Positions 5,301 to 39,387 of a stretch of DNA of 64,000 bases are shown here, piece after piece (position 1 is the first letter of the stretch; every line of letters starts with the position of its first letter). A program made the position numbers and the translations under genes. The notes under the pieces were generated by a model. It had not been told where the DNA came from, made no database searches, and worked only from the letters and a program-made list of their open reading frames with translations. Location: positions 124,001 to 188,000 of the IMG/VR virus record IMGVR_UViG_3300027969_000039; one strand, given 5' to 3'.

Positions 5301-8300
5301 TTAGAGACATTAATGCACAAGGCAAATGGTTACCATGGGTTGGTGATCGCTTAGGCAATATAAGCAATAATAATAATATTTCATTTACTCCCGGTAGAAA
5401 TAAGTATTGGAGTTTAGCTGGTGGTGGTAATGCCACACAAGTTGCTTGGGCATTAACTTCAGGCGGAACACCGGCTGCTGCTAATTATCCTTTACCACAA
5501 GATACTATTATCATAGATAATAATGGGTTGAATACAAGTGCATCAATAACTTTTAATTCGGCTATATATTTTACTAGTATAAACATGGCAAGTAGAACCA
5601 ATGCTTTTACACTTGGTATTACTAATGGCGAGAATGTCTATGTTTCAGGAGATTGGACAAATGGTTCAGGGTTAACAAGTGTAACTAATGTGGGCGGAAA
5701 AATAAATTTTAATAACAGTCTACCGGGTTATGTTCAAAGTATAACAAGTGCAGGTAAATTGTTTAGTTCACAAATTTATATTAACACAGTTGGAATAGTT
5801 CGACTACTAGACAATTTTGATCAAGACTCGTTAGTTGGAGTTCAAGGATTTGAACTTACGAAAGGCACACTTACTCTTAACGGGTTTAGTTTAAATACTG
5901 CACAATTTAACTCAAGTTTTACAAATGTCCGTACTATTAATTTTGGTTCAACTTTTATAAATGTTACTCATCCTACAGCAGGAACTTCCGTAATAGCTAT
6001 GTCCAATGCCACTAACTTTAGTGCAACTGGTACCGGTGGCTTTAGAGCAAACATGTCAGTAACTAGAACATTTAATTGTGGCACAGGTGGTGCACCTACA
6101 GTAGCACCAAACTTGTTTATATTTACTGGTGCAAGTATACCTACTATTAGTAGTGGTAGTTATTTTAATACAATAGACTTCACCGGTAGTACTTGCTCAC
6201 CAGCAACATCAACAGTTAATGTTGTCAATGCAACATTAGCAACTGGAGTTGGAGTTTTTACTGGACTAACATTGAATTGTAGCAGTAGTGGAACAATAAC
6301 AACTAATGCAAAAACAATAGCAGCAGTTACTTTATTGTCAGGAAGTCCACAAATATCTGGAACATGTACTTGTACGACATTCACAGTTAATGGTGGAACG
6401 CTTACTGCTTGGGGCGGTACAATTGTACCAACTGGTAGTTTTATTGTTACTACTGGTAATGTATACTTAAGCAATGGCGGTACATTAACCGTGACTACGA
6501 TTACTCAAAACGGTGGTGGTGTATATCTAACTGCAAGTTTTACGATGACTGCTGGAACTAGTACATACACATTCAATGCAGGTACATTAAGTATATACAA
6601 TACACAAAGTAATCAAACATTATCAGTTGGTAGATTTATTTCTAACGGCACTGGCGTTCGTTTTTTACAAATTTATGGATATATAAGATTAACAAACACA
6701 ACGGCAGCAGCAACAGCAGTTGATATGGCAAATACAACTAACTTGATAGTTGATTATGGTACATTCTATAGTCCATCTGCTGGATTCTTAACATCTGGTA
6801 CAGTAGCACAAACATATACAATAGGAACGACTGGCGGTAACGTAAACAATGCAATAAGTATACAATGGGATAGTGGTGGAACAGCAGTACCTACGATAAC
6901 GACTGGTAGCTGGTTCGCTAACTTTAATCCAAGCGCAGCAGGCGCATTCACGATACTTGCTACTACTATTAACATAGCAAACTCAGTGACATTAAGTAGT
7001 GCTGGAACTTGGACAAACTGTTCGTTCAACTTGCGCGGCACTGGGACTTTCAATAGTAATACTAAAAGCTGTGCTACACTAACTCTTAATAGTGTTGGAG
7101 CATATAGTTTAGCTGGTTCAGGTCTACTATGTGTAACCTATCAACAGACAGCAGGTTCATTCTTCTGTGGTAATAATTTGACTTGTAGTGGCACTGCTAC
7201 TTTCAGTGGTGGTAGTTTTGGTATATCAAATGGCACATTAGCCTGTACAACATTTACAGTTAACGGTGGAACTCATGTTTGGGCAGGTGGTAATGGAACA
7301 TTAACAGCGTCGGTTGGTATTGTTGTGTCAGCAGGTTCATTCACATACAGTACCGGTACGATAACTGCGACACCAGCGTGGACTATATCGGGTACTGGTT
7401 CAGTAACATTTAACAATAGTTACTCGTTGACTGCGACTGGTACCTTCACTTTAACAGCTGGTACTTTAATACTTGCCCCAGGAGTAACTTTAACAGTTGG
7501 TATTTTTACTAGTAATGCTTCTGGTACACGTAATATTCAATTTGGTGATTCATTCACCGCAGGTAATATCTCACTAGCACATACGACAGCAGGACAAACT
7601 TGCATAGGTATGACCAATCTTACTGGTTTTACTTGGTCTGGAGCAGGTGGATTTGTTTCTGCGATGACTGTCGCTAGAACTTTTGGTGCAGGTGGAACGG
7701 GTGGAGCTACCGCAACTAATGCTCCCCCATTAACTATTACGGGAGGTTCGGCTGTAATAACATTTAATTTTCCTAGTTATTGGTCAAGACTCAATTTAAC
7801 TGGTTTTGCCGGCGTGGGTGCCGCTTCACTTCAAGGTGGCGCGCAAAACGTGACCGGTGATGTCGTTGTTGGAGCCAGTGGAAGTTATGTTCCAGGTTTT
7901 GAGTTTTTTGGAGGAAATAATACACTTACCACAAATGGTAAAATAATGGGTTCCTTGACAATATCGGGCGGTAATACTACATTGAAGGATGCATACACAG
8001 GTAATGCAACTTCAGGTTTGAGTCTCACCGGTGGAAATCTGTATACGCAGGGATTTCCTATAACAACGAATACATTTGGTGGTACCGGGGCAAATGTTAG
8101 AGGTATATTTGGAACTGGTCAAATATTTAATATTACCGGATCAGGTCTTAATCAACCTAGTCAATTTAGTGGTTCAAATTTAACAGTAAGTGGATTGATT
8201 CTTAATTATAGTAATGCTAGTGCAAAATTTGTTTCAGTTGGAAACGTCGGAAACCTTACTTTTGACTCAACAATTAATATAGGTGCAGGTCAATTGACTA

Positions 8301-8704
8301 TTACTGGTAACAGTACCGCTACTTTTAATAACATAACAAATTCAGTTCAACCATGCACTCTTACAATTGCTACCGGTCTCGGAACCCCAACATTTATTAA
8401 TTTCAATTTGCGTGGCACAGCAGGAAATTTAGTAACTATCAACTCAAATGTTGCGGGCACTCGTGCAACAATTCGTAAAGCTAGCGGCACAGTATATGGA
8501 GATTATCTATCTATCCAAGATATAAATGCGACCGGTGTAACCGGTCAGACCAATAGTGCTCCTACTTGGTATGCAGGACCCACTTCAACCAATGTAAGTA
8601 ACAATACAGGTTGGATATTCACGCGACTACCCATCATCTCAATGGGTAATGTATCCATCGATGCAAGCAATGGCGGCATTACTTTTGGCGACCAACCCGT
8701 TTAA
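2354..8704 (+). CDS. 2116-aa Gly/Thr/Ser/Asn-rich beta-solenoid-like fibre or adhesin, probably virion-associated
   Basis: NRFWVGGSGTW...NWSATSGG...VPTAADSVFFD start, internal repeats, very few charged residues, TAAATA motif and GAGG RBS upstream. Confidence 0.7.
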   Translation: MANRFWVGGSGTWSTTATTNWSATSGGTAGASVPTAADSVFFDQAATYNVTMTGALTCLDITISAGVVLLITGTAPTLTVSGSMTLSNTTAWSITGLLTFNSTSAGRTITTNNTTISSPITFSGVGGVWSLGGNLTTTSTITTTLTNGTINLNGFDLTTGIFNSQNANTRAITFGSNFIYLVHPTAATTVLNIGNTGITYTGTGGFSTAMTVTRTFTATTTPTVTGGVPLYITSGTSAVTFTASSWFTLLNFNGYTGTASGTIFAKDLTLSSGGTYTGIVLTTYGTGSLNANGSTTGIGALTLGVATPNPTVTTLATNFNCSTYTQSVATATFNINGFTLTCSTTANYNAGTLSINAGTINCTTFQTGDSFTLNSGTINPSVSFVANFGAPSATFTYSPGGTLTAVPTFTQQNGTVVLNQNLTLAQNGTYTFSLVAASGVLTLNNNTLSTGGFVRTVSGANTINFGTSGQILLTGNNMTVWGVTGALITTTGTVSINSTYTGSVGTRTFSFYLVSQFNVAIGSGTGNTMYLASGATDTVTLLGGMNSVDLTGMTFTLSQSSACTIAGPSFIIPATGGTVSPGTGLIEFNGAAVGISVNRAIDNPLSFTSGSVCTLLANLTTGSTRSSTMNSATLRLNGYQLTTGTFAATIASTRTIAFGTTGVINVTGTGTVWNTGTITLLTITGIPVVNVTSTGSTAITVASGALPEAQAISFNFTGGTYALTFLGTAGYTAKNVDFTGFAGSWTLSTDNTIYGNWKYSTGMTVTTAPNSLVFGATIGNTQIMTSNGKTTNTIKLTGGGIVGLADPLTLSSDILVEAGTFNSNNYDISTVRISSYTTTTTRAINLGSSIVTMSGLFRVNTIGLTFNAGTSTIAYTGTNSLTVENGSVIGLTFYNFTNTTMGPSNIGITGKNTFNNLTLPTSTSTSAIYTFANDIIVNGNLTIPTPQSNVNDDNKLVVASATIGNQVKITVNGQISSLTKIFFRDINAQGKWLPWVGDRLGNISNNNNISFTPGRNKYWSLAGGGNATQVAWALTSGGTPAAANYPLPQDTIIIDNNGLNTSASITFNSAIYFTSINMASRTNAFTLGITNGENVYVSGDWTNGSGLTSVTNVGGKINFNNSLPGYVQSITSAGKLFSSQIYINTVGIVRLLDNFDQDSLVGVQGFELTKGTLTLNGFSLNTAQFNSSFTNVRTINFGSTFINVTHPTAGTSVIAMSNATNFSATGTGGFRANMSVTRTFNCGTGGAPTVAPNLFIFTGASIPTISSGSYFNTIDFTGSTCSPATSTVNVVNATLATGVGVFTGLTLNCSSSGTITTNAKTIAAVTLLSGSPQISGTCTCTTFTVNGGTLTAWGGTIVPTGSFIVTTGNVYLSNGGTLTVTTITQNGGGVYLTASFTMTAGTSTYTFNAGTLSIYNTQSNQTLSVGRFISNGTGVRFLQIYGYIRLTNTTAAATAVDMANTTNLIVDYGTFYSPSAGFLTSGTVAQTYTIGTTGGNVNNAISIQWDSGGTAVPTITTGSWFANFNPSAAGAFTILATTINIANSVTLSSAGTWTNCSFNLRGTGTFNSNTKSCATLTLNSVGAYSLAGSGLLCVTYQQTAGSFFCGNNLTCSGTATFSGGSFGISNGTLACTTFTVNGGTHVWAGGNGTLTASVGIVVSAGSFTYSTGTITATPAWTISGTGSVTFNNSYSLTATGTFTLTAGTLILAPGVTLTVGIFTSNASGTRNIQFGDSFTAGNISLAHTTAGQTCIGMTNLTGFTWSGAGGFVSAMTVARTFGAGGTGGATATNAPPLTITGGSAVITFNFPSYWSRLNLTGFAGVGAASLQGGAQNVTGDVVVGASGSYVPGFEFFGGNNTLTTNGKIMGSLTISGGNTTLKDAYTGNATSGLSLTGGNLYTQGFPITTNTFGGTGANVRGIFGTGQIFNITGSGLNQPSQFSGSNLTVSGLILNYSNASAKFVSVGNVGNLTFDSTINIGAGQLTITGNSTATFNNITNSVQPCTLTIATGLGTPTFINFNLRGTAGNLVTINSNVAGTRATIRKASGTVYGDYLSIQDINATGVTGQTNSAPTWYAGPTSTNVSNNTGWIFTRLPIISMGNVSIDASNGGITFGDQPV

Positions 8705-8716
8705 CATAAATAAAAT

Positions 8717-9043
8717 ATGAAATACTTAACCATCACCTTACTATGCCTGTCCTTCCTACCCGTTTATGCACAAGATAAACCCGATGAAGTTGTAAATGTC
8801 AAAATAGAATGTTACAATACTATGAAGATATTCACAGAGTTACAGAAAACTTATAAAGAAATTCCTGTTATCCTAGGTAAGACTAGTGATGAAGCAGGTT
8901 CTACTATGACATTATGGATGAGTCCAAAAGAGAAAACTTGGACAATCATAGCAACTAAAGATAAACTTAGTTGTATTGTTGGAGCCGGCACTGAAGCTGA
9001 GTTCTCTCCTATCTTTATGAAAAAGAAAGATTTATTTAATTGA
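8717..9043 (+). CDS. Secreted hypothetical protein (paralog of 33749-34045)
   Basis: Signal peptide; C...KE...G...TWT...C pattern shared with 33749-34045. Confidence 0.65.
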   Translation: MKYLTITLLCLSFLPVYAQDKPDEVVNVKIECYNTMKIFTELQKTYKEIPVILGKTSDEAGSTMTLWMSPKEKTWTIIATKDKLSCIVGAGTEAEFSPIFMKKKDLFN

Positions 9044-9774
9044 AAAAATGTATCACAGCCTTACTGCTATGTGCTTCTTTTTGTGCTAATGCTTACCCCG
9101 CATTGACTGCACAAGCATGGTTAGTTGCTGATGACAATGGACTTATATTAGATGGTTCACACACTAAAGACGTTCGTTCTATTGCTAGCATAACTAAACT
9201 GATGACTAGCATAGTTGTATTGGATAGTGGACAATCATTAACTGAAACAATACCAAAGAAACTATACAATAGAACATTCACTCGACAAGAGTTACTCAAT
9301 CTAGCCATTATCAAATCAGATAACAATGCTGCTAGAATGCTTTGCGAATACTATCCGGGCGGTATGTTTAGATGCATTCAAGCAATGAATAATAAAGCTA
9401 CTGAATTAAAAATGCACAGTAGCAATTTCACTGACCCAACCGGGTTGCTTACTACCAATGTAAGCACCGCAGAAGATTTAGTTAAGTTGGTAATGGCAGC
9501 AAAGAATTACCCAACTATTACTAACGCAAGCAATACCTCAACCATTCAATGGCAAATTAACAAAAAGACTCGTGCTATCTTTCACAATACCAATGACCTA
9601 GTTGGCAAAGGCGTTGACTTTATAGTAAGTAAAACAGGATGGATAACCGCTAGCGGTGGCTGCATTGTTATGATGCTACACGGAGAGCAGGGAGTTAGGA
9701 CAGTTGTATTACTAGGTAGTAAGAATACAAAGACCCGTATACCAGAAGCGTATATGGTATCTAAATTACATTAA
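9040..9774 (+). CDS. D-Ala-D-Ala endopeptidase/carboxypeptidase (peptidase S11, PBP7/PbpG-like)
   Basis: SxxK (ASITK), SxN (SDN) and KTG motifs; signal peptide. Confidence 0.9.
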   Translation: MKKCITALLLCASFCANAYPALTAQAWLVADDNGLILDGSHTKDVRSIASITKLMTSIVVLDSGQSLTETIPKKLYNRTFTRQELLNLAIIKSDNNAARMLCEYYPGGMFRCIQAMNNKATELKMHSSNFTDPTGLLTTNVSTAEDLVKLVMAAKNYPTITNASNTSTIQWQINKKTRAIFHNTNDLVGKGVDFIVSKTGWITASGGCIVMMLHGEQGVRTVVLLGSKNTKTRIPEAYMVSKLH

Positions 9775-17616: not shown

Positions 17617-17645
17617 AGTATAGCACAAAACCCATTTATTGTCAA
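17617..17645 (-). promoter_or_regulatory. Early promoter TTGACA-17-TATACT
   Basis: Variant of the repeated cassette. Confidence 0.8.
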
Positions 17646-18685
17646 CCGTAAGTTATATAGTCTCTTATATTGATTTTTCTTAAGGAATCTTGTTTTTTGA
17701 CAAAATTATCAAAATCAGTTTGATTGTCATTCCCACTAGCAATTAAGTTAGAGTAATGATTCAAAGTTGAATTTTCTTCTTTGGTAAATTTTTCTCTAGC
17801 TGCCAAAGTAAATGAATTTACACTAGTTATCAAAAGTTCTTTTTTGTCAGCTATGTTATTGAAACTATGACCTATATTATGTTCTTTCACAAAGTTTATA
17901 ATATTATCAAAATCATAAATATTCAATGCAGTAAGTGTGGTATATAAATTGATACTAACTGCTTCATAATTGCTTGCAAATTTTTTATATTTTTCTAATA
18001 CATCACAAAAAATATTCCACTTAGTGGGCCATCTCATATATTCTTGAACTTTTCCTACTCCATCTAGACTTATAGTAATTTGTATGGAGATACCTGTTTC
18101 AGCGATAGGAATTAACTCATCCATAAATGAGGTACAATTAGTATTAACTCTAATTGATTTTATATTTGGTGGCAAACTTTTTAATACTTCTTTTATATTT
18201 TTGCTATTGCTTGGTTCGCCACCAGTTAAGTCTAGTTGAGTTATTCTATCAATGGGCAATACTTTACTATTATAATAAGGAGTAGCATCTCTTATTTCAT
18301 AATTAGAAGATATTAAAGATGCTATCTTAGTACTAACATGCGGACTACAAAATTGACATGCAGTATTACAAATATTATCTAACATTAAATCTACTGTTAG
18401 ATAATCAATATCAGATTGCATTTTCATATCTTCGTTATAATACATCCTATCACTTTTTTGATTAATTTCTTCTTTTTCTTGGCACCGAACGCATTCTTTG
18501 GGAAATTTATTTTCTTTAAAAGTATTTTTTATATTTTTCATCCAGTTACTGTTTATCATTTCGCTATAACTAGAAAAAAAAGGTATATCGTTCATAACGC
18601 AACACCCACTGATCACTGCATTTGATCCAAACTCAACATAAGGTGGTGTAAGTTTAGCATAGTGATCAAGTCTAGCACAGTACAT
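17642..18685 (-). CDS. Radical SAM protein with N-terminal Cys-rich (twitch/SPASM-like) segment
   Basis: CNTACQFC, TGGEP, N-terminal C...CC...CxxC. Confidence 0.85.
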   Translation of the reverse strand: MYCARLDHYAKLTPPYVEFGSNAVISGCCVMNDIPFFSSYSEMINSNWMKNIKNTFKENKFPKECVRCQEKEEINQKSDRMYYNEDMKMQSDIDYLTVDLMLDNICNTACQFCSPHVSTKIASLISSNYEIRDATPYYNSKVLPIDRITQLDLTGGEPSNSKNIKEVLKSLPPNIKSIRVNTNCTSFMDELIPIAETGISIQITISLDGVGKVQEYMRWPTKWNIFCDVLEKYKKFASNYEAVSINLYTTLTALNIYDFDNIINFVKEHNIGHSFNNIADKKELLITSVNSFTLAAREKFTKEENSTLNHYSNLIASGNDNQTDFDNFVKKQDSLRKINIRDYITYG

Positions 18686-19272
18686 TACGGACGCTTTTTC
18701 AGTACAGAATCAGCTAATCCGTATGCTACTGCTTCGGTAGCACTCATAAAAAAGTCTCGTTCCATATCTTTAGCTAGTTCCTCGTATGTCTTACCAACAC
18801 TATTGTGGTCAACATAGATTTGTGTAAGACATTTTTTCATAGTTATAATTTCTCTGACTTGAATTTCCATGTCGGTAGCTTGACCTCGTGCGCCACCACT
18901 GGGCTGATGAATCATATGCCTTGCGTTGGGCAACATATAACGCTTACCTTTTGCTCCCGCTTGTGCAAGCAAACTACCCATACTACATGCTTGACCCATG
19001 ACGATGGTCATAACATCAGGCTTAATGAATTGCATACAATCGTAGATTGCCATACCAGCAGTTACACTACCACCTGGGCTATTGATGTAAACACTAATAT
19101 CCTTCTCGCCTTCGCTTTCTAAGTAAAGCAATTGGGCAACGACTAGATTTGCCATTTGATCGTGTACTTCGCCCTCAAGCAAAATAACACGGTCACGCAA
19201 CATGCGGCTGTATATATCATAACTACGCTCACCTTTGCTTGTTTGTTCTAAAACCATTGGGACTAAACTCAT
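18685..19272 (-). CDS. clpP: ATP-dependent Clp protease proteolytic subunit
   Basis: [31 protein letters not shown] (catalytic Ser), MIHQP, GQATD, ERDFFM. Confidence 0.97.
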
Positions 19273-19329
19273 ATACTTCCTTAAAATTAAAAGTATAACA
19301 GAAAGATTAGCTAGTTGCAACTATATTGG

Positions 19330-20859
19330 TTACCGTTTGCGTTTTTCTCTTGTACCTACTTCTTTGGGTTTTGATACTGGGTTGACGATATTTTTAGATG
19401 CAGTTGCTAATTGATCAATGCCTGCACTTTTTTCTCGTTTGGCTCTAGGTGTAGTTGTTGTCTGTTCATCATCTTTTGGCGCACCAGAACCTTTGTCAAT
19501 TTTAAATGTGTAATTACCTTTTATACCAGTACTATAATATGTTTTACCTGCTGATAGATAAACGCCTTTGATGCTTGTACCTGGATAAATTGTATTGAAT
19601 TCTTGCAGTGTCCATTTACCTTTGCCTTCACTTGCTTTGGTATACATCTGTACTAATGCACCATTGTTTAATATATCAGCAGCAGCTTTACTAAAATTTG
19701 TTTTTTCATTTACTTCTTGTGCTGCTTTATGCGCTACTGCTGCCATCAAGTGATAATACAAATTAACATTATCTGGGTCATCTGTGTTACGTTCTTCTGC
19801 TAACTTTGTTAAATTATCACTAAGTCCAAGTTGTCCAAGATTATCTAAACTAACAGGACCTATTTTCTTAAATGCTCTGATCATTTCAACATCGTCTGGA
19901 CTAATGATACCATAACGTACACCCAGCATCAATGGAGAACCTGCTTGTCCTGCATCTTGTATCTCACGTAATATATCAACTACTTCTTTATGTTTGTTTA
20001 AGAATTTTCCACCATCCGGGGTTTCTGCTATCTTATCAATCTGATCAATCAAATTACTTGCGCTAGCTGTAGCACCTTTGCCACCTTTTGTACTAACTAA
20101 TACGCTACCACCTTGACTATTAGTTATAACGCTATCACTAAGTCCTGCTGTTTTACTATCATCAAAACTAATCAATGTCTTTTGAAATGTTCCACCTAAA
20201 AACTTATTTGCAGCTTCACCGGCATTACCGGTGTATTGACCTTTTTGCAATGCTATTGGTTGTAGTATCTCACAGAAGTAATCACGAAAAGCCGAAAAGC
20301 TAACTCCCTCAGGTGCTTCAAATGATATTGGTAATGGTTGTCCTATTGCGATATTATGTGCTAGTGCATACAATGGACTATCTGTTCCTAAACTGCTAGC
20401 AAGTTGATTCATTATCTTTGAGATAGTTAAATCAAGTTTGTCAGTTAATAAATCTTGTGGACTTAAGCCAGCATCTGCTTTTGCTGCTGCTTTACCGCCA
20501 AACTTATATGTTGAACCATCTACTGTGAATGTGTTTGATACTTTGTTATCAGTAAGTGAGGGCTTAACTTCTTGTAGATATTGTCCAATAACAAAAGTAC
20601 CAAATGAGATTATTGCAAACCCACCTGTACGTCCAGAACGACTATTTTGCCATTGAATATCTGGAACTTGTTGTTCAATTTGAATTAATGCTTGATCTAA
20701 TTCTTCGGGTGTAAATTTGCCACCACCTTCCGGGAAGAATTTAATATCGTTAAATATTGCTTCATCACCGTTTTCATTTTTGAAAACGTCGCCTGGTTTG
20801 CGACCTGCTAATCCTGTACTTTCGTTCAGTTGGTCTAATAATGTTATAAATTCACGCAT
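19330..20859 (-). CDS. 509-aa late protein, possible PD-(D/E)xK-like nuclease fold
   Basis: MREFITLLDQLNE N-terminus, late TAAATA motif; YFCEIL...LSDS...VSTK pattern. Confidence 0.5.
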   Translation of the reverse strand: MREFITLLDQLNESTGLAGRKPGDVFKNENGDEAIFNDIKFFPEGGGKFTPEELDQALIQIEQQVPDIQWQNSRSGRTGGFAIISFGTFVIGQYLQEVKPSLTDNKVSNTFTVDGSTYKFGGKAAAKADAGLSPQDLLTDKLDLTISKIMNQLASSLGTDSPLYALAHNIAIGQPLPISFEAPEGVSFSAFRDYFCEILQPIALQKGQYTGNAGEAANKFLGGTFQKTLISFDDSKTAGLSDSVITNSQGGSVLVSTKGGKGATASASNLIDQIDKIAETPDGGKFLNKHKEVVDILREIQDAGQAGSPLMLGVRYGIISPDDVEMIRAFKKIGPVSLDNLGQLGLSDNLTKLAEERNTDDPDNVNLYYHLMAAVAHKAAQEVNEKTNFSKAAADILNNGALVQMYTKASEGKGKWTLQEFNTIYPGTSIKGVYLSAGKTYYSTGIKGNYTFKIDKGSGAPKDDEQTTTTPRAKREKSAGIDQLATASKNIVNPVSKPKEVGTREKRKR

Positions 20860-20930
20860 AGTTTAGTATTTATCTATAGGAAAAATTATAAATTTATTGC
20901 CCGATAGTAAATACAATGAAGGAGAAAATT

Positions 20931-21248
20931 ATGTTAAAATTTCTAAAAAGTCTGTTTGGTATGGGACCATATAGCGAGAGTCGCCCGATTGATGCAGTTG
21001 CACCTGGTGCAGCACCTTATAAGGTACCAGAACCCGCTGCAACTACGCCGATTCCGTATGTTCCCGAATCACCACTTGTGAAGTTAGGTCCTGAGCCTAC
21101 CGCAGTGCCGGTCGTTGAAACTACACCTAAGCCAAAAGCAGTAGCTAAACCGAAAGCAACAAAGCCAGCTGTAAAGCCAGCAGCTAAAGCACCAGCTAAG
21201 CCAAAAGCACCAGCAACAAAAAAGCCTAAGATTAGCATTGCTAAGTAA
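20931..21248 (+). CDS. Pro/Ala/Lys-rich protein
   Basis: AAGGAG RBS; histone H1-like KPAAK tail. Confidence 0.65.
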   Translation: MLKFLKSLFGMGPYSESRPIDAVAPGAAPYKVPEPAATTPIPYVPESPLVKLGPEPTAVPVVETTPKPKAVAKPKATKPAVKPAAKAPAKPKAPATKKPKISIAK

Positions 21249-21953
21249 ATGAATACGATAGGGTTTGACTTAATAAGTGACTTGAATCTAATCCCTGAGG
21301 ATAGTTTCAATTGGGAAGGTAAAGCAACTAGTTTATACTGTATAATAGCAGGAAACATTAGTCAAGATTTACGCACTATTAAGCAAACCTTATCTCATTT
21401 ATCTAAATTCTATCAAGGTGTATTCTATACGTTAGGTTCACTAGAATATCATAACACTGATGTTGTAGCTAAACGCACAGACGAAATACACAAAGCCTGC
21501 AAAAGTATACGCAATTTAGCAATCATGCATCATCATGTAGTAGTGATTGATGGCATTGCTATCATAGGTGCTAATGGTTGGTATGGAAACACAGTAGAAA
21601 CTGATGATGTTGTAGTCAATGCTATAGTTGAAGTACATCGCAATGAAGATTTGATCTATCTAAAGAGTACCATTGAACGCTTACAAAAACATTTAGATGT
21701 TAAAAAAATTGTAGTAGTCTCTAACTCTGCGCCCAATGAAGAATTGTATTTTGGGGAACATCCAAAGCATTTAGAAAATCAATTACACATGAGTATGAGT
21801 TTAATATCCGATACTGAAAACAAAGTATCGCACTGGTTATACGGCACATATGGAAAAGTAGTTGACACCAATATCAATGGCATCAACTACATAAACAACG
21901 GGTGTTTTAAAAGAAACCCTTATTGGGCTAAAAGAATAGAAATTACTCTTTAA
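21249..21953 (+). CDS. Degenerate metallophosphoesterase-fold protein
   Basis: Motif positions kept but ligands altered (SDLN, AGNI, GSLE, YGT). Confidence 0.65.
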   Translation: MNTIGFDLISDLNLIPEDSFNWEGKATSLYCIIAGNISQDLRTIKQTLSHLSKFYQGVFYTLGSLEYHNTDVVAKRTDEIHKACKSIRNLAIMHHHVVVIDGIAIIGANGWYGNTVETDDVVVNAIVEVHRNEDLIYLKSTIERLQKHLDVKKIVVVSNSAPNEELYFGEHPKHLENQLHMSMSLISDTENKVSHWLYGTYGKVVDTNINGINYINNGCFKRNPYWAKRIEITL

Positions 21954-22255
21954 GCCTCTGCTTCAACTTTAATTTGAAGTGGATAACCTTGACTACGTGC
22001 TTCTAACGTAACCTCAATACCTTTTTGTTCTGCAATTTCATAAGGCAGTACAGCAACTACAGCACTACCTTCTTCATGGATATTGTGTGTAATTGTACTA
22101 GCAGTATCTTGATTATAATTAAAGTAATCAATTAAACTACCTACGACAAACTCTATACTAGTTACATTATCATTGATGTAAATGATTTTGTACAATGGAG
22201 GCTCAGCCAATGCTAGATTAGGTTTGATTTTGATTTTTGTTTCCGTTTTAGACAT
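21950..22255 (-). CDS. clpS: ClpS N-degron adaptor
   Basis: PPLYKIIYINDNVT..EFVV..L...F...IH.EG.AVV....EIAE.K...YPL. Confidence 0.9.
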   Translation of the reverse strand: MSKTETKIKIKPNLALAEPPLYKIIYINDNVTSIEFVVGSLIDYFNYNQDTASTITHNIHEEGSAVVAVLPYEIAEQKGIEVTLEARSQGYPLQIKVEAEA

Positions 22256-22280
22256 AGTTAGTTTATATGTGTTAGTTATA

Positions 22281-22311
22281 AAAAGTGTGTAGTCACCATA
22301 ACTACACACTT
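22281..22311 (-). terminator. Intrinsic terminator after hsp20
   Basis: aagtgtgtagt/actacacactt stem with U-tract on the minus strand. Confidence 0.65.
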
Positions 22312-22322
22312 ATGCTATTATA

Positions 22323-22787
22323 CTATTTAGTATAGGTAATAGCAATAGACTTGGGCTTTTTCTCTTCAGGAATTTCACGTTTTAAGTGAACATTAAGAAT
22401 ACCCAATTCTAAATGAGCATTAGAAATTTCTACATAATCAGCAAGTTGAAATTCACGACGGAAGTTTCGTTCGCTGATTCCTTTGTGTAGATAATTAACC
22501 TCATTTGTCTCAACTGTATCCGCAGCATGATTACCTTCAATTATTAAGAAATTTTTGTCTTTTGTAACTGACAGGTTATCGTGACCAAATCCCGCAACAG
22601 CAATACTAATCATATACTCGTCCTCATTTATTTGGATTACATTATACGGGGGATAGTGTGAATTGGAATTTAGATGTTGAGAATGCATTCTGTTCAACTC
22701 GTCAAACATAGTATCAAAACCGATACCAAATTTGTGTAGTTGTGGAATGTCAATGGTGCGAAGGTGTAAAGTTTTTGTGTTTGTCAT
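22323..22787 (-). CDS. Small heat-shock protein (Hsp20, IbpA-like)
   Basis: IGFD, YPPYN, AVAGF, YLHKGIS.R.F.R.F.LAD, GIL...L.REIPEEKKP..IAI. Confidence 0.95.
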   Translation of the reverse strand: MTNTKTLHLRTIDIPQLHKFGIGFDTMFDELNRMHSQHLNSNSHYPPYNVIQINEDEYMISIAVAGFGHDNLSVTKDKNFLIIEGNHAADTVETNEVNYLHKGISERNFRREFQLADYVEISNAHLELGILNVHLKREIPEEKKPKSIAITYTK

Positions 22788-22846
22788 TTGTTTTCTCCTT
22801 TATAAGCAAGATGACTATTAAGTAGACCCGATTATCGGCATCTACA
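22783..22846 (-). promoter_or_regulatory. ROSE-like RNA thermometer in the hsp20 5' UTR
   Basis: UCUU-G-CUU AUA AAG-GAGA hairpin hides the SD with a bulged G (U(U/C)GCU motif); a second hairpin lies upstream. Confidence 0.7.
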
Positions 22847-22894
22847 ATGAGTATTTATTATACTAAAAATACGCAAAAAATTCTACTATTTAGG

Positions 22895-23116
22895 TCAAAA
22901 TAGTTTTTTGGGAAGACTTTGGTCACGTAAGTATTTTTGCCATCTGCGTTTGGCTAGACCTTTATCTACTTTACGCTGTATACTAGGCTTGACATATTGT
23001 TCCCGATCACGCAATTCCTGCAATAGGTTTTGGTCTGTAATCTTCTTTTTAAACTTCCGTAATGCTTTTTCAACATTTCCATCTGTTACAATAACTCGTC
23101 TTCCTTTAATACTCAT
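22895..23116 (-). CDS. rpsU: Ribosomal protein bS21
   Basis: [11 protein letters not shown]...ELR.RE.YVKPS..RK; LPKKLF C-terminus resembles betaproteobacterial S21. Confidence 0.92.
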
Positions 23117-24321
23117 AAAATTGATTTTGGTTCTAAAACTTGCTCCCTTGTTATATTTATCTCAGTTACGTTATTTTCTCTGTACTTTTTGGTGTTGAAC
23201 ATATGCGGCATGAGTACTTTTTCAATTTCCGTGTGTAATCCACGTGCCCCAGTCTTTAATTTCAAGCAATTTTCAACAATTTGTTCTAGTGCCCCGGCAT
23301 CAAATTCTAATTTGATATTGTCAATACTCAATAGATACTTGTACTGGTCAATATAGTTGTTTTTTACTTCCGTAAGTACACGCAGCAATTCTTGCTTATT
23401 TAATTCCCCGATGCTAACCGTAGTAGTAAAACGGCCGATAAATTCAGGAATCATCCCGTACTTAGTTAAGTCATCCGGAGAAACTTGTCCTAAATCACCT
23501 TCTTTTTTGTGGTCTTTGATCTCTGCACCAAATCCAATACTAGTTCCGTTCATGCGGTTATTGATTATATCTTTCAATCCAACAAAGGCTCCGCCTGATA
23601 TGAATAATATATTTTTCGTATCAATCTCCAGCATTTCTCCACCAGGATGCTTTCTGCCACCTGCTGCTGGAATACGACAAACTGTACCTTCAACCAACTT
23701 AAGCAATGCTTGTTGCACACCTTCACCTGATACATCGCGTGTAATGTTTACGCTTTCTCCTTTACGTGCAATCTTGTCAATTTCATCAACGAACACAATG
23801 CCACGCTCTGCTAGTCTAGGATCACCTCCAGCAGCATTCACCAACATGCTAATCATTGATTCAACATCATCACCAACATATCCTGCCTCAGTTAAACTTG
23901 TAGCATCAGCAACGACAAAGGGCACTTTGAGATATTTGGCTACAGTCTTAGCAAGCAAGGTTTTACCTGAACCAGTTGGTCCAATCAACAATACATTACC
24001 TTTTTGAATGTCTAAATCTTTAGGAGGATGTGTGATGCGCTTATAGTGATTAGCGATAGCCACACTCAGTACCTCCTTGGCACTATCTTGACCAATAACA
24101 TGCTGGTCTAGATAATCTTTAATTGAAGAAGGATCGTTGTATGGTTCTTCTTCTTTGGGTTTAGGAGTTTCTGCTACTAGATTTTCATCTTCAATAAGTT
24201 GGGTACATAGTTCAATACATTCACTACATATAGCAACATCATCTCCAACGATTAGTTTTTTAACTTTATCTTTATGTGTATTACAAAAAGAACAATATGT
24301 CAATTTTGATTCAGTGGTCAT
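23113..24321 (-). CDS. clpX: ATP-dependent Clp protease ATP-binding subunit
   Basis: C4 zinc domain, [12 protein letters not shown] pore loop, DEIDK, RKH loop, IGF loop, GARGL. Confidence 0.97.
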
Positions 24322-34124: not shown

Positions 34125-34736
34125 ATGAAAGAAATACTAGAGACATTAAGAGTGCAACGCTGGGACGATCATCGCTATTATCATCACAGCAGGATAAATC
34201 AATTTTTGCATTTAATTAGTGCATTATCATTCATAGTAGCATATGCTTATCTATTCATTGATCCCGTAATTAGTGCTTACATCGCGTGGTTTATCTCAAT
34301 GACTACAAGACAAGCAGGACATTTCTTCTTTGAACCCAAAGATTACGACACATACAATCAGGCCACACAAGATCATAAAGAGGCTATCAAGATTGGATAC
34401 AATCTCAAACGCAAACGAGTATTGATCGCTTGCTGGTTGGCTGTGCCGTTGCTGGCATACTTTGATGCGGCATTGTTTAACTTTGTGATGCCAGACGCTG
34501 CACCAGACACACTAATAGATAGGATTGGTTGGGGTTGGTTATGGTTAGGATTAGCAGCAGTTGTGTTTAGAATGATACAACTTACTGCTATTCAAAGCCG
34601 CAAAGTAGCACTAGTATGGTGCTTAAAGATAATGACAGATCCATTCCATGATGCTGTCATCTATCGCAAGAGTCCATTATATCTGATGCGTGGGCAGTTG
34701 ATTGATCCTGACTTGCGTCAAGATTATGAAGATTAA
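34125..34736 (+). CDS. His-motif integral membrane protein (DUF962/Mpo1-like)
   Basis: YHHSRINQFLH and QAGHFFFE motifs, several TMs. Confidence 0.55.
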   Translation: MKEILETLRVQRWDDHRYYHHSRINQFLHLISALSFIVAYAYLFIDPVISAYIAWFISMTTRQAGHFFFEPKDYDTYNQATQDHKEAIKIGYNLKRKRVLIACWLAVPLLAYFDAALFNFVMPDAAPDTLIDRIGWGWLWLGLAAVVFRMIQLTAIQSRKVALVWCLKIMTDPFHDAVIYRKSPLYLMRGQLIDPDLRQDYED

Positions 34737-35731
34737 AGCGGAGTAAGATTGTCGCGGAATATCTTCCAGGCTCTCTCCCAACTCCAACGCTGGCTACCTT
34801 CTAATACTCTATCTCTATCTAATTGTAGGCAACCAGTTATAGCATCAGCTAGGTTCTCATTCACAAATCCAGTGACACCTTGCTCAACAACATCTAATGG
34901 TCCTAGCACAGGGTATGCTGCTACAGGAGTGCCGCAGGCCATGGCTTCAATCATCACAATGCCAAATGTTTCCCACCGTGAAGGAAACACAAACACATCA
35001 GCATCAGCATAGCATTGTGCTAGAGCGAAGCCGGTCTTGAATCCTTTGAACTCCACATCAGGATATAGTTTTTCCAGTCTAGCACGATCCGGCCCGTCAC
35101 CTACTAATACTTTGCGAGCACCAGGATAATCCAAACTGCAAAACGCATCCAGATTCTTTTCTATGCTGAGTCTGCACACACACAACAGCACAGGACCGGT
35201 GCCTCTGCTGCCGCGATAACCGGGATTAAATATGCTTCGGTCAACGCCGCGGGTCCATGAGTTGATCTCGCCCCAGAAGCCATGTTCTTTCAGTTCCTTC
35301 ACCATACTATCTGTAGTAGTCAATACACGACCACTATGTTTGTGAAACCATCTCACATATTTCCAAGTTATAGATTGTGGTATCCTTAGATACTTATGTA
35401 AGGCTTCAGGATACTTTGTATGATAAGCAGTATTATACCTACGATAGTGCCGGTCAAGATAAAATCTAGCGTAGAGACCAAGAGGACCCTCTGTGGCGAT
35501 GTGTATATAATCCGGAGCCACCGCCCTAATCTTCTCCCCAATCTTCCAGGGAATCGAAATTTTAACTTCACTGTAGCCTGGGCAATCAAAAAATAGGAAC
35601 TCCATGGGAGTAAGGAAAACAACACGATAGTCGTCCAGAACCGCACACGCCTCAATATTCTTATATGTAGTGACAACGCCATTTATTTGCTCTGGTAAGT
35701 TATCCGTTATTATCAGTATCGTCTTGATCAT
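34733..35731 (-). CDS. GT4 glycosyltransferase, Agt-like glycolipid synthase
   Basis: TD...Q.NGVV.T, IHIATEGPLG, YHT.YPE, RGVD, ETFGIV..EAMACGTPV. Confidence 0.85.
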   Translation of the reverse strand: MIKTILIITDNLPEQINGVVTTYKNIEACAVLDDYRVVFLTPMEFLFFDCPGYSEVKISIPWKIGEKIRAVAPDYIHIATEGPLGLYARFYLDRHYRRYNTAYHTKYPEALHKYLRIPQSITWKYVRWFHKHSGRVLTTTDSMVKELKEHGFWGEINSWTRGVDRSIFNPGYRGSRGTGPVLLCVCRLSIEKNLDAFCSLDYPGARKVLVGDGPDRARLEKLYPDVEFKGFKTGFALAQCYADADVFVFPSRWETFGIVMIEAMACGTPVAAYPVLGPLDVVEQGVTGFVNENLADAITGCLQLDRDRVLEGSQRWSWERAWKIFRDNLTPL

Positions 35732-38911: not shown

Positions 38912-38934
38912 TAAGAAACCCGCCGAAGCGGGTT
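38912..38934 (-). terminator. Terminator of the tmRNA gene
   Basis: aacccgc-UUCG-gcgggtt followed by U-rich tail. Confidence 0.8.
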
Positions 38935-38939
38935 CTGGT

Positions 38940-39232
38940 TGTTTCTTTTATACAGTAAGTCCTACTGCACCTTAGCTTAAGCAGCTAAAGAATATAACTC
39001 ATCGTTTGCAGTTATGAAATTTGCTTGATTAACGGTCATCGCCTACCGTGTTGCCGTCTCTACTATCTACCTCTGTCGAAACCAGGGCAGGCCCGTCAGA
39101 AGCATACTCCTACAGATCGAAACTGATAAAGATAAGTGCGTACACCTATCCGAGTGAGTATGCTTATGGTGGACCTGGCGGGAGTCGAACCCGCGTCCAG
39201 AAGTCCTTCGCTTTGAAGGGATTACAACAATA
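38940..39232 (-). ncRNA. ssrA: Circularly permuted (two-piece) tmRNA, tag (A)ANDELYSLAA
   Basis: Acceptor piece with T-arm and CAGGUCC-ACCA ends at 39167 and precedes the coding piece starting GGGCCUG at 39094; G3.U70 pair; tag ORF 38977-39009; ends approximate. Confidence 0.92.
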
Positions 39233-39243
39233 ACTTCTATTTA

Positions 39244-39387
39244 TCACCAAGTTTTCTTAGCGATCCAATGTTGGATTTCTTGCACCCGCCATGCTAGTCC
39301 CCAAGGCAGTGTGAAAAATATCTTCTCACCACTAGGAGTATACATGGTCCGACCATCACTGTCAACCCCCATCAATCCTATAAACAT
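39244..39387 (-). CDS. 47-aa hypothetical protein (likely start MFIGLMG)
   Basis: GAGGAG RBS. Confidence 0.55.
   Translation of the reverse strand: MFIGLMGVDSDGRTMYTPSGEKIFFTLPWGLAWRVQEIQHWIAKKTW

What the first reader, a model, noticed from the sequence alone, without database searches (positions are those of the whole stretch)
18685..24321. Phage proteostasis and translation toolkit: ClpX, ClpP, ClpS, Hsp20 and bS21, matched to its own tmRNA tag
Seen: intact clpX (zinc domain, GYVG, RKH, IGF), clpP, clpS, an IbpA-like sHSP and bS21 within 6 kb, plus a tmRNA whose tag ends LAA. Known: ClpXP recognises the C-terminal LAA of ssrA tags; ClpS serves ClpA, which is absent here. Inference: the phage encodes both the tagging RNA and the matching protease, and its ClpS (pocket NDNVTSI versus E. 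coli NDDYTPM) may redirect host ClpAP, for example against defence proteins or to rescue ribosomes stalled by anti-phage RNases.
Basis: partly seen in the sequence, partly recalled or inferred. Interest (0 to 1): 0.68.

Follow-up and report, generated by a model that had tools for sequence, protein, structure and literature searches.

The report
Huge-phage Clp protease and chaperone module
An uncultured phage of roughly 350 kb, by its complete relatives, carries its own protein-degradation and chaperone genes (ClpX, ClpP, ClpS, a small heat-shock protein, and ClpA further along the genome), ribosomal protein bS21 and a two-piece tmRNA; the genes are real and conserved, but similar sets are already known from other giant phages.

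Summary
Window 18685-24321 (minus strand) encodes intact ClpP, ClpS, an IbpA-like Hsp20, bS21 and ClpX. A tmRNA with tag ANDELYSLAA lies 14.6 kb away.

Three corrections:
- The tmRNA is the circularly permuted, two-piece, beta-proteobacterial type.
- ClpA is not absent. A 753-aa ClpA, translationally coupled to a J-domain protein, lies about 14 kb outside the window on the same 231-kb viral contig, so the phage has its own ClpAPS.
- No SmpB, SspB or AlaRS turned up in this phage or in four complete relatives, so tagging would depend on host factors.

The order clpX-rpsU-hsp20-clpS...clpP is conserved in most of the 80 related IMG/VR loci examined, and all catalytic motifs are invariant. In 23 loci dnaK sits inside the module.

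The tmRNA is not linked to the clp genes in relatives. One complete huge phage with a kindred tmRNA lacks ClpX. An LAA tag ending is generic. "Matched" therefore means ordinary compatibility, not a private pairing.

Terminase places the phage in the Rak2/PA5oct/Atu_ph07 supergroup, where Clp sets, Hsp20, DnaJ, bS21 and tmRNA have been published.

Verdict: a new member of a known kind, most likely a general proteostasis module. The anti-defence role is untested.

The parts
18685..19272 (-). [quoted passage not shown] It is 195 aa from the ATG at 19272; the ORF is open to the TTG at 19320.
   Evidence: Pfam CLP_protease 262.7 bits. NF001368 303.5 bits against a cut-off of 249. About 260 bits to solved bacterial ClpPs. 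The Ser113/His138/Asp189 triad and the N-terminal SLVPMV loop are conserved in 50 unique clade sequences. The AAGGAAG Shine-Dalgarno sequence precedes the ATG at 19272. It is the only CLP_protease gene found in each genome searched.
19330..20859 (-). 509-aa protein of unknown function in the variable slot between clpS and clpP.
   Evidence: No Pfam, PHROG or NCBIfam match. It belongs to a phage-only family in the ESM Atlas. It is detected in only 19 of 80 related loci, so it is not core to the module.
20916..21248 (+). 110-aa Pro/Ala/Lys-rich ORF of unknown function.
   Evidence: No family match. Detected in 17 of 80 loci.
21249..21953 (+). 234-aa viral calcineurin-like metallophosphoesterase. 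It is a conserved neighbour that converges on clpS.
   Evidence: Atlas feature and structure hits are to viral Metallophos families, with TM 0.82-0.93. There is a weak TIGR03729 match. Present next to clpS in 75 of 80 loci.
21950..22255 (-). clpS, N-degron adaptor of ClpA (101 aa).
   Evidence: Pfam ClpS 78 bits. PDB matches to ClpS of Caulobacter, Agrobacterium ClpS2 and E. coli. In E. coli numbering, N34, D35, T38, H66, E79 and E82 are invariant in 55 unique clade sequences. The modelled complex with the phage ClpA N-domain scores 0.85 against a best control of 0.01.
22323..22787 (-). IbpA-like small heat-shock protein (Hsp20/alpha-crystallin, 154 aa).
   Evidence: Pfam HSP20 58.6 bits. phrog_432 138.7 bits. 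NCBIfam IbpA 134.8 bits is the best family but is under its cut-off of 212. Present in 75 of 80 loci.
22895..23116 (-). rpsU, ribosomal protein bS21 (73 aa, no N-terminal extension). Its start overlaps the clpX stop codon.
   Evidence: Pfam Ribosomal_S21 49.4 bits. TIGR00030 53.8 bits against a cut-off of 28.95. The ATGA overlap with clpX is read. Present directly after clpX in 70 of 80 loci and found in all 5 relatives searched.
23113..24321 (-). clpX, AAA+ unfoldase with an N-terminal C4 zinc domain (402 aa).
   Evidence: zf-C4_ClpX plus AAA_2. NF003745 520.8 bits against a cut-off of 359. 397 bits to solved ClpX. The Zn cysteines, Walker A/B, GYVG, pore-2, RK(H), IGF and GARGL motifs are invariant or nearly so in 63 unique clade sequences.
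38912..39282 (-). ssrA, circularly permuted (two-piece) tmRNA gene with tag ANDELYSLAA.
   Evidence: ARAGORN calls a permuted tmRNA at 38886-39259. Rfam beta_tmRNA scores 155.6 bits against 84 over the full model 1-331, and tmRNA_permuted scores 148.4 bits against 47. The acceptor stem GGGCCUG/CAGGUCC-ACCA gives a G3:U70 pair (read). Permuted tmRNAs were found in all five large relatives.
39337..39365 (-). Sigma-70-like promoter upstream of the tmRNA (TTGACA-17-TATACT).
   Evidence: 11 of 12 consensus positions match. This is a consensus match only.
38916..38935 (-). Intrinsic-terminator-like hairpin at the 3' end of the tmRNA gene.
   Evidence: It is also the terminal helix of the Rfam beta_tmRNA match.

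Best explanation
This is a conserved proteostasis module of a widespread clade of uncultured huge phages. The four complete relatives are 349-364 kb, and the terminase is akin to the Rak2/PA5oct/Atu_ph07 jumbo myoviruses.

The phage makes its own ClpP peptidase and two unfoldases that dock on it through IGF loops. ClpX is in the window. ClpA lies about 14 kb beyond the window and is translationally coupled to a J-domain co-chaperone. Phage ClpS binds the phage ClpA N-domain and would feed N-degron substrates to ClpAP. An IbpA-like sHSP holds unfolded proteins, and some relatives add DnaK at the same spot.

bS21 is translated in tandem with ClpX and would join host 30S subunits. A separately transcribed two-piece tmRNA, working with host SmpB, AlaRS and EF-Tu, would release stalled ribosomes and append a tag ending in LAA. 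Both phage and host ClpXP or ClpAP can then degrade the tagged proteins.

The net effect I infer is that ribosomes stay free and the protein pool stays clean and recyclable during a long, protein-heavy infection.

Shown: the identity, intactness, conservation and gene order of the parts, and a ClpS-ClpA interface model that passes its controls. Inferred: every activity, the dependence on host SmpB, and the physiological purpose.
For: - Family assignments and motifs.
- ClpA plus a J-protein on the same contig and in all five relatives.
- The module order clpX-rpsU-hsp20-clpS-(phosphoesterase)-variable slot-clpP holds in nearly all of the 80 related loci with enough flank.
- Catalytic and docking motifs are invariant at 73-100% overall identity, which indicates purifying selection.
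- dnaK is inserted between rpsU and hsp20 in 23 of 80 loci, so the locus collects chaperones.
- ClpS with the ClpA N-domain scores 0.85 against a best control of 0.01. That mark was reached by 51 of 78 solved complexes and 2 of 108 mismatched pairs. The runs agree in at least 93% of contacts and the partner's pLDDT is at least 89. The interface lies on the patch equivalent to E. coli E79/E82/K84.
- tmRNA: full-length Rfam match, promoter, terminator and G3:U70. It was found in all five large relatives. The C-terminal LAA/AA is conserved in kindred phage tags while their middles vary.
- No match to SmpB, SspB, AlaRS or L/F-transferase in the phage genomes searched.
- Phage identity: TerL and a relative with direct terminal repeats.
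Against: - No expression or biochemical data could be obtained.
- The host is unknown, so the phage and host tags, and the phage and host Clp proteins, could not be compared.
- ClpS departs from E. coli at three pocket positions: D36N, M40I and M62T. Its N-degron range may therefore differ.
- ClpS, ClpA and IbpA score below NCBIfam equivalog cut-offs.
- ClpP and ClpX occur in the virion proteome of phage G (PMC12484599), so an assembly role is not excluded.
- A like ClpS-ClpA complex has been solved, so the complex score may reflect likeness rather than binding of this particular pair.
Confidence: 0.55

Rival explanations
1. The phage runs a private tag-and-destroy pathway: its tmRNA tag is matched specifically to its own ClpXP, and its ClpS hijacks host ClpAP. 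The purpose is to remove host defence proteins or to rescue ribosomes stalled by anti-phage RNases.
For: The tmRNA and ClpXP co-occur in this phage and in all five large relatives. The tag's C-terminus is conserved. The ClpA-binding patch of ClpS is conserved and could also fit a host ClpA. The exact tag ANDELYSLAA is found in none of 185,579 bacterial species genomes. Two relatives add an ArfB-like RF-1-domain ORF, which may be another rescue factor.
Against: ClpA is phage-encoded. The LAA ending and the ClpX tag-contacting loops are the generic ones, so nothing indicates that phage and host are orthogonal. No SmpB was found. The tmRNA is unlinked to the clp genes in relatives. One complete 383-kb phage with a kindred tmRNA has no ClpX. 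No evidence connects the module to any defence system.
Confidence: 0.15
2. Virion-assembly role. ClpP acts as, or alongside, the prohead maturation protease, and ClpX and ClpA act as assembly or translocation chaperones for the very large capsid rather than in general protein turnover.
For: ClpP also hits PHROG 'head maturation protease' families (phrog_94, 181 bits) and NCBIfam Clp_rel_HeadMat (109 bits). [quoted passage not shown] An assembly role was proposed for jumbo-phage ClpA and ClpX (PMC7824862).
Against: The match to cellular ClpP is far stronger: 303.5 bits, over its cut-off, against 109 bits, under the cut-off of 120. The N-terminal axial loop and triad are those of cellular ClpP. 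The gene sits among clpS, hsp20 and clpX, not beside the terminase. ClpS, the sHSP, the J-protein and DnaK fit protein quality control, not head maturation.
Confidence: 0.12
3. Developmental regulation. Phage ClpXP and ClpAPS mainly time the infection by degrading specific phage or host regulators, such as replication or transcription factors, as host ClpXP does for lambda O and Mu proteins.
For: There is precedent in lambda and Mu (cited in PMC6102473). In the related phages Phosso and Atu_ph07, clpX lies next to topoisomerase and IF-3 genes (PMC6102473).
Against: No candidate substrate or degron was identified here. In this clade clpX is embedded with chaperone genes rather than replication genes. 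This reading does not explain the sHSP, DnaK, the J-protein or the tmRNA.
Confidence: 0.1
4. The tmRNA is an integration-site remnant or a decoy rather than a working tagging RNA.
For: Temperate phages often carry ssrA fragments. A tmRNA without a coding sequence from mycobacteriophage DS6A inhibits host tmRNA (PMC11915505).
Against: The gene matches the full-length model 1-331 and has its own promoter and terminator, G3:U70, an encoded CCA end, an intact resume codon and a tag ORF. The tag C-terminus is conserved across dozens of phage copies.
Confidence: 0.05

Closest known systems
Clp, chaperone and translation gene sets of the Atu_ph07 / AP-J-162 / Phosso jumbo phages (PMC6102473, PMC11242549)
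   Same: These are jumbo myoviruses with a related terminase (50% identity to Phosso). They encode ClpX, ClpA, ClpP, ClpS, DnaJ, Hsp20 and bS21. AP-J-162 also has a tmRNA. ClpA is adjacent to DnaJ in Atu_ph07 (gp292/gp293), as it is here.
   Different: In those phages the genes are scattered and clpX is followed by IF-3. Here five of them form one conserved 5.6-kb module with clpX-rpsU overlap. There is no ClpB. The tmRNA is the two-piece type. The proteins are only 38-50% identical. This clade is uncultured and its genomes are about 350 kb.
Bacterial trans-translation with ClpXP/ClpAP degradation (ssrA-SmpB, SspB, ClpX, ClpA, ClpP)
   Same: A tmRNA with an alanine identity pair. A tag that begins AND and ends LAA. 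ClpX with the canonical pore-1, pore-2 and RKH loops that bind the ssrA C-terminus. ClpA and ClpP.
   Different: SmpB and SspB are missing from the phage, so the pathway is a hybrid of phage and host parts. The gene is circularly permuted.
Bacillus megaphage G ClpXP plus tmRNA (PMC12484599)
   Same: A huge phage that encodes adjacent ClpP and ClpX together with a tmRNA. Its ClpX is 50% identical.
   Different: The phage G tag (AKLNITNNELQVA) does not end in LAA. No ClpS, ClpA or sHSP module is reported there. ClpXP was found in its virions.
Two-piece tmRNAs of aquatic phages, e.g. OM43 phage Melnitz (PMC9004378)
   Same: A permuted ssrA in an aquatic phage without its own SmpB. That paper counts 53 two-piece forms among 133 unique phage tmRNAs, 50 of them from marine or aquatic phages.
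   Different: The Melnitz RNA is of the alpha-proteobacterial type and riboswitch-linked, in a 141-kb phage for which no Clp genes are mentioned. This one fits the beta-type model best and co-occurs with a full Clp set.
Translation genes of huge phages (bS21, tmRNA, SmpB) in Al-Shayeb et al. 2020 (PMC7162821)
   Same: bS21 and tmRNAs are reported as recurrent in phages over 200 kb and are read as means of taking over host translation.
   Different: Many bS21 proteins there have N-terminal extensions, whereas this one is 73 aa with none. Some of those phages carry SmpB and this clade does not. That paper's text does not mention proteases or chaperones.
Phage ClpS as a hijacker of host ClpAP (hypothesis in Iyer et al. 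2021, PMC7824862)
   Different: It was proposed for phages that encode ClpS alone. Here ClpA and ClpP are phage-encoded as well.

Membership tests
ClpX | N-terminal C4 zinc-binding domain | tested here: met
   Pfam zf-C4_ClpX 51.1 bits against 27. C10, C13, C32 and C35 are invariant in 63 unique clade sequences.
ClpX | Single AAA+ module with Walker A/B, the GYVG pore-1 loop, the pore-2 loop, the RKH loop and sensor-2 | tested here: met
   The alignment to E. coli ClpX scores 397 bits. The motifs are invariant in the clade, except that the H of RKH is present in 60 of 63. NF003745 scores 520.8 bits against 359.
ClpX | IGF loop for docking on ClpP | tested here: met
   SIGFG is at residues 261-265. 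I/M-G-F is conserved in 63 of 63 sequences.
ClpX | ATP-dependent unfolding and degradation of ssrA-tagged proteins together with ClpP | not testable with these tools
   This needs biochemistry.
ClpP | Ser-His-Asp triad, the N-terminal axial loop and a full-length ClpP fold | tested here: met
   S113, H138 and D189 are invariant in 50 unique sequences. Pfam covers 2-181 of 182 positions at 262.7 bits. NF001368 scores 303.5 bits against 249, while TIGR00493 scores 294.5 bits, just under its cut-off of 308.6.
ClpS | ClpS fold with the residues that bind the N-degron alpha-amino group (E. coli N34, D35, H66) and T38 | tested here: met
   Pfam 78 bits against 23. These residues are invariant in 55 unique clade sequences.
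ClpS | Canonical hydrophobic pocket and gatekeeper (E. coli D36, M40, M62) | tested here: inconclusive
   The window protein has N, I and T at these positions. In the clade, position 36 is E, N or D, position 40 is M in 51 of 55, and position 62 is T in 54 of 55. Specificity may differ. All NCBIfam ClpS equivalog scores are under their cut-offs, the best being 69.7 bits against 149.
ClpS | Binds the ClpA N-domain through the E79/E82/K84 patch | tested here: met
   E79 and E82 are invariant and position 84 is K or R. The complex model with the phage ClpA N-domain scores 0.85 against a best control of 0.01, with the interface on ClpS residues 70-77 and 80. This is a model only, and a like complex has been solved.
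ClpA (outside the window, G000:C1:192994-195255) | Clp_N domain, two AAA+ modules, no ClpB-type middle domain, and a ClpP-docking IG(L/F) loop in D2 | tested here: met
   Clp_N 52.2 bits and AAA_2 173.3 bits. The protein is 753 aa and aligns end to end with E. coli ClpA at 612 bits. NIGFG aligns to E. coli SIGLI. TIGR02639 at 794 bits is the best family but is under its cut-off of 993.
IbpA-type small heat-shock protein | Alpha-crystallin domain, with IbpA as the best-matching subfamily | tested here: inconclusive
   The alpha-crystallin domain is met: Pfam HSP20 58.6 bits against 20.8. IbpA equivalog status is not met: 134.8 bits against 212.
Ribosomal protein bS21 | Ribosomal_S21 domain at about the length of bacterial S21 | tested here: met
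   Pfam 49.4 bits against 27. TIGR00030 53.8 bits against 28.95. The protein is 73 aa. Incorporation into ribosomes cannot be tested here.
Two-piece (permuted) tmRNA, beta type | Permuted order (T-arm and CCA piece before the 5' acceptor and coding piece), G3:U70, a resume codon and a tag ORF ending in a stop | tested here: met
   ARAGORN calls a permuted tmRNA. RF01850 scores 155.6 bits against 84 over the full length, and RF04321 scores 148.4 bits against 47. The acceptor pairs GGGCCUG/CAGGUCC can be read.
Two-piece (permuted) tmRNA, beta type | Processing into two RNAs, and charging with alanine | not testable with these tools
   This needs RNA ends from infected cells.
   PF01668 was found in 0 of 6 records: G000, its 303-kb copy G001, and four genomes that CheckV rates 100% complete. 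The control detected SmpB in 10 bacterial genomes.

The most novel reading that the evidence does not exclude
The conserved pairing in this clade of a phage tmRNA with a complete phage ClpXP/ClpAPS set is a counter-defence or takeover device. The phage would raise trans-translation capacity to clear ribosomes stalled by host mRNA- or tRNA-cleaving abortive-infection systems, and would dispose of the tagged fragments with proteases the host cannot switch off. bS21, made in tandem with ClpX, would bias the freed 30S subunits towards phage mRNAs.
Probability: 0.12. Interest if true: 0.7.

Novelty: new member of a known kind. Interest (0 to 1): 0.35.

Why it matters
The finding shows that a full bacterial-type degradation system (ClpX, ClpA, ClpP, ClpS), an sHSP, a J-protein, sometimes DnaK, bS21 and a tmRNA are a stable, selected part of a widespread uncultured huge-phage lineage. 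At least 277 IMG/VR contigs carry the ClpX. These genes are therefore not a sporadic pick-up.

That makes the lineage a good system for asking why giant phages invest in their own protein quality control, and whether phage and host Clp parts are interchangeable. It does not open a new category. The same gene kinds, and the ClpS-hijack idea, are already published for Atu_ph07-like phages, and the tag-protease "match" is the generic one.

The compact module, the conserved clpX-rpsU overlap, and the clade-wide absence of SmpB beside a conserved tmRNA are modest new details.

Tried and rejected
- Near-identical DNA in GenBank phages: none.
- Host tag matching. A back-translated pattern for ANDELYSLAA* found nothing in 185,579 species genomes. 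The pattern for the relatives' tag ANDSQFALAA* hit only a 3-kb contig holding tRNAs and a permuted tmRNA (tag ANDTQFALAA) in a Lake Erken MAG. That MAG also has a separate standard tmRNA. I read the contig as a binned phage fragment, not a host, so the host remains unknown. ARAGORN did not call the MAG's standard tmRNA, and I left it there.
- The Sharkady & Williams 2004 paper on beta two-piece tmRNAs is not held. My idea that such tmRNAs belong to Comamonadaceae- or Rhodocyclales-type hosts is from memory only and is not used as evidence.
- Families sought and not found in the phage genomes: SmpB, SspB, GroEL, AlaRS and L/F-transferase. ClpB: AAA_2 matched only ClpA and ClpX in G000.
- A bacterial or plasmid origin for the contig was rejected on four grounds: the terminase, relatives with direct terminal repeats, the tRNA array, and gene content that is mostly of unknown function.
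- The large protein searches were not used, because the family scans left none of the five proteins open.

Full report
**What is there**

On the minus strand of window 18685-24321 lie, in transcription order, clpX, rpsU, an Hsp20 gene and clpS, then two or three unrelated genes, then clpP.

| Gene | Coordinates | Notes |
|---|---|---|
| clpX | 23113-24321 | |
| rpsU (bS21) | 22895-23116 | |
| Hsp20 | 22323-22787 | |
| clpS | 21950-22255 | |
| metallophosphoesterase-like gene | 21249-21953 (+) | conserved neighbour of clpS |
| 110-aa ORF | 20916-21248 (+) | |
| 509-aa phage-only protein | 19330-20859 | |
| clpP | 18685-19272 | the ORF is open to 19320 |

Pfam, PHROGs and NCBIfam agree on all five named genes.

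- ClpX passes its NCBIfam equivalog cut-off (520.8 bits against 359). It aligns over its whole length with solved ClpX at 397 bits. The four zinc cysteines, Walker A/B, GYVG, the pore-2 loop [16 protein letters not shown] and GARGL are all present.
- ClpP scores about 260 bits against solved bacterial ClpPs. It has the Ser-His-Asp triad and the LVPMV axial loop. Its real start is probably the ATG at 19272, which follows AAGGAAG.
- The clpX stop codon overlaps the rpsU start codon (ATGA).

**The tmRNA**

ARAGORN and Rfam find one tmRNA, at 38886-39282(-), 14.6 kb from clpX. Its tag is ANDELYSLAA. It is a circularly permuted, two-piece gene. Rfam beta_tmRNA matches the full model at 155.6 bits against a gathering score of 84, and tmRNA_permuted scores 148.4 bits. 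The acceptor stem GGGCCUG/CAGGUCC-ACCA contains the G3:U70 alanine identity pair, as read. A near-consensus promoter (TTGACA-17-TATACT) and a terminator hairpin bracket the gene. It looks like an intact, independently transcribed gene and not an attachment-site remnant.

**What kind of genome this is**

The window is part of a 230,993-bp IMG/VR virus record that CheckV rates 66% complete. It has 12 tRNAs at one end. A 303-kb copy of the same phage (G001) is identical in 15 of the 16 proteins compared and 99% identical in the other. That copy carries a terminase large subunit.

The nearest cultured relatives of the terminase are:
- Sinorhizobium phage Phosso, 50%.
- The Pseudomonas PA5oct group, 47-48%.
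- Vibrio phage 2.275.O, 43.5%.
- Cronobacter GAP32, 45%.

This is the Rak2/PA5oct/Atu_ph07 supergroup of jumbo myoviruses. ClpX at 74-100% identity occurs on 277 IMG/VR contigs. These include four genomes of 349-364 kb that CheckV rates complete, one of them with direct terminal repeats.

**ClpA is not absent**

Searching the whole contig found a 753-aa protein at G000:C1:192994-195255, about 14 kb beyond window position 1. It has a Clp_N domain and two AAA+ modules.

- Its best family is ClpA (TIGR02639, 794 bits, under the cut-off of 993).
- Its best solved match is E. coli ClpA, end to end, at 612 bits.
- It has no ClpB-type middle domain.
- It carries NIGFG where E. coli ClpA has the SIGLI ClpP-docking loop.
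- Its start codon overlaps the stop codon of a 267-aa J-domain protein with an HPD motif.

A ClpA-sized frame with a Clp_N domain, and the J-protein just upstream of it, occur in all five large relatives. In the four complete relatives the ClpA Walker, pore-loop, IGF and sensor motifs are intact. The phage therefore encodes a complete ClpAPS as well as ClpXP.

A model of phage ClpS with the phage ClpA N-domain (residues 1-148) scored 0.85 against a best control of 0.01. That mark was reached by 51 of 78 solved complexes and 2 of 108 mismatched pairs. The runs agree in at least 93% of contacts, and the partner's pLDDT is at least 89. The interface lies on ClpS residues 70-77 and 80, which correspond to the E. 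coli E79/E82/K84 patch. A like complex has been solved, so this result shows likeness and not proof of binding.

**Conservation**

In 80 related loci the order clpX-rpsU-hsp20-clpS-(phosphoesterase, opposite strand)-variable slot-clpP holds wherever the flank is long enough.

| Gene | Loci with the gene (of 80) |
|---|---|
| bS21 | 70 |
| Hsp20 | 75 |
| ClpS | 75 |
| ClpP | 62 |
| 509-aa protein | 19 |
| 110-aa ORF | 17 |

- Functional residues are invariant across 63 unique ClpX, 50 unique ClpP and 55 unique ClpS sequences, although overall identity falls to 73-74%.
- In ClpS, using E. coli numbering, N34, D35, T38, H66, E79 and E82 never vary. Position 36 is E, N or D. The gatekeeper position 40 is M in 51 of 55 sequences, and the I in this phage is a rare variant. 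Position 62 is T in 54 of 55.
- In 23 of 80 loci a DnaK gene sits between rpsU and hsp20, so this locus collects chaperones.
- Each of the five relatives searched has a single CLP_protease match and no GroEL. In G000, AAA_2 matches only ClpA and ClpX, so there is no ClpB.

**Is the tag matched to the phage protease?**

- Permuted tmRNAs occur in all five large relatives. Their tags are ANDSQFALAA in three, ANDSVFALAA in one, and the window's own tag in the 303-kb copy.
- A scan for the shared acceptor arm returned 80 more viral loci. Together with the relatives' loci and the Lake Erken contig, 72 of 86 loci carry a tmRNA, giving 73 tags of which 39 are unique. Of the 73, 57 end in LAA and 67 end in AA. 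The middles vary and some tags reach 23-32 residues. The C-terminal degron is therefore under selection, as it is in bacteria.
- Nothing makes the pairing private. The ClpX loops that contact the ssrA C-terminus are the canonical ones. LAA endings are generic among proteobacteria (my knowledge).
- The tmRNA lies 150-200 kb from the clp module in the complete relatives (coordinates).
- Of five other large contigs with a kindred tmRNA, only one has ClpX. One of those without it is a 383-kb genome rated complete.
- SmpB, the obligatory tmRNA partner, is absent from this contig, from its 303-kb copy and from four complete relatives. The same search detected SmpB in 10 control bacteria.
- SspB was not found in this contig. 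AlaRS and L/F-transferase were not found in the five relatives searched. Tagging must therefore use host factors.
- The exact tag ANDELYSLAA occurs in none of 185,579 bacterial species genomes. The host remains unidentified, so the phage and host tags could not be compared.

**Most likely mechanism**

I read this as a phage-borne proteostasis module.

- ClpXP and ClpAPS degrade incomplete, tagged, misfolded or N-degron proteins.
- The sHSP, the J-protein and, in some relatives, DnaK handle unfolded proteins.
- The tmRNA, working with host SmpB, frees stalled ribosomes and marks their products for either the phage or the host Clp proteases.
- bS21, made in tandem with ClpX, joins host 30S subunits.

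The parts and their conservation are shown. All activities and the purpose are inferred.

Rival readings are set out with their evidence in the Rival explanations section:
- A private anti-defence tag-and-destroy pathway.
- A virion-assembly role.
- Timed degradation of regulators.
- A decoy or remnant tmRNA.

None of them is excluded by experiment, and each is less well supported.

**Comparison with what is known**

- Atu_ph07 was reported with ClpX, ClpA, ClpB, ClpP, ClpS and DnaJ next to ClpA (PMC6102473).
- AP-J-162 was reported with six Clp proteins, Hsp20, DnaJ, bS21 and a tmRNA (PMC11242549).
- Phage G was reported with ClpXP and a tmRNA (PMC12484599).
- Huge phages in general carry bS21 and tmRNAs (PMC7162821).
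- Two-piece tmRNAs make up 53 of 133 unique phage tmRNAs and are mostly aquatic (PMC9004378).
- The idea that phage ClpS feeds the host ClpAP is already in print (PMC7824862).

Specific to this clade are:
- The compact conserved module.
- The clpX-rpsU overlap. In Phosso, clpX is followed by IF-3 instead.
- The beta-type two-piece tmRNA.
- The consistent lack of SmpB.

I therefore file this as a new member of a known kind and give it moderate-to-low interest.

**Limits**

- No expression data could be obtained.
- The host is unknown.
- The genome of this particular phage is incomplete.
- Every functional statement is an inference from sequence.

Noticed in passing
G000:C1:192194-195255 (outside the window; loci L001:653-1456 and L002:82-2343): A 267-aa J-domain protein with an HPD motif overlaps by 4 nt the start of the phage ClpA gene. 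The pair recurs in all five large relatives, and the same adjacency is reported in Atu_ph07 (gp293/gp292).
   Followed up: partly
L036, L044, L060 and 20 other loci, between rpsU and hsp20 (e.g. L060:11493-13406): A full-length DnaK (Hsp70, about 860 bits) is inserted inside the clp module in 23 of 80 related loci. Two further loci carry it upstream of clpX. It was not found in this phage's two partial assemblies (G000, and G001 at 86% complete).
   Followed up: partly
window 23113-23116; 70 of 80 related loci: The clpX stop codon overlaps the bS21 start codon (ATGA). In the distant relative Phosso, the gene after clpX is IF-3 instead. In both lineages an unfoldase gene is tied to a translation-initiation gene, and this is unexplained.
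   Followed up: partly
L100 (G005:C1:221203-221526) and L101 (G004:C1:312348-312635): Two complete relatives encode small (159-187 aa) RF-1-domain ORFs. These may be ArfB-like alternative ribosome-rescue factors. None was found in this phage.
   Followed up: no
L086:1934-2008 and L089:2950-3024: A tRNA with anticodon CTA, which ARAGORN labels Pyl and which looks like an amber suppressor, lies next to or near the tmRNA in two relatives. The window itself reads cleanly in code 11.
   Followed up: no
L102-L181 (viral loci that share the tmRNA acceptor arm): Several phage two-piece tmRNAs encode unusually long tags of 23-32 residues, such as ANADTYDFSAMSFTGNTV...FALAA. They keep the C-terminal ALAA.
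   Followed up: no
window 36556-37575 (-): A PstS-like periplasmic phosphate-binding protein (PBP_like_2, 131.6 bits) lies 1.3 kb from the tmRNA. This is a typical aquatic-phage auxiliary gene.
   Followed up: no
window 17642-18685, 39723-41930 and 51426-52670 (all -): There are three radical-SAM enzymes. One is of the twitch-domain type and abuts clpP. Another has a B12-binding domain and lies next to the tmRNA region. They sit alongside a GT4 glycosyltransferase (34733-35731) and a UDP-glucose dehydrogenase (47071-48267).
   Followed up: no
window 2354-8704 (+) and 41923-45984 (-): Two very large ORFs (2116 aa and 1353 aa) have no PHROG match. The 2116-aa ORF also has no Pfam match.
   Followed up: no
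window 9040-9774 (+): A D-alanyl-D-alanine carboxypeptidase (Peptidase_S11, 113.6 bits) is encoded by the phage.
   Followed up: no
L027 and L074 (both from IMGVR_UViG_3300027749_002876, 524,565 bp): One 524-kb viral contig carries two diverged copies of the whole clp module, with ClpX 78% and 74% identical to the window's. It is probably two related phages joined in assembly rather than one genome.
   Followed up: no
L095 (CAIMDH010000093.1, Lake Erken MAG bin-2863): A 3-kb contig holds tRNA-Cys, a permuted tmRNA (tag ANDTQFALAA), tRNA-Trp and tRNA-Ile inside a bacterial MAG that also has a standard tmRNA. It is likely a phage fragment that was binned into the MAG.
   Followed up: partly
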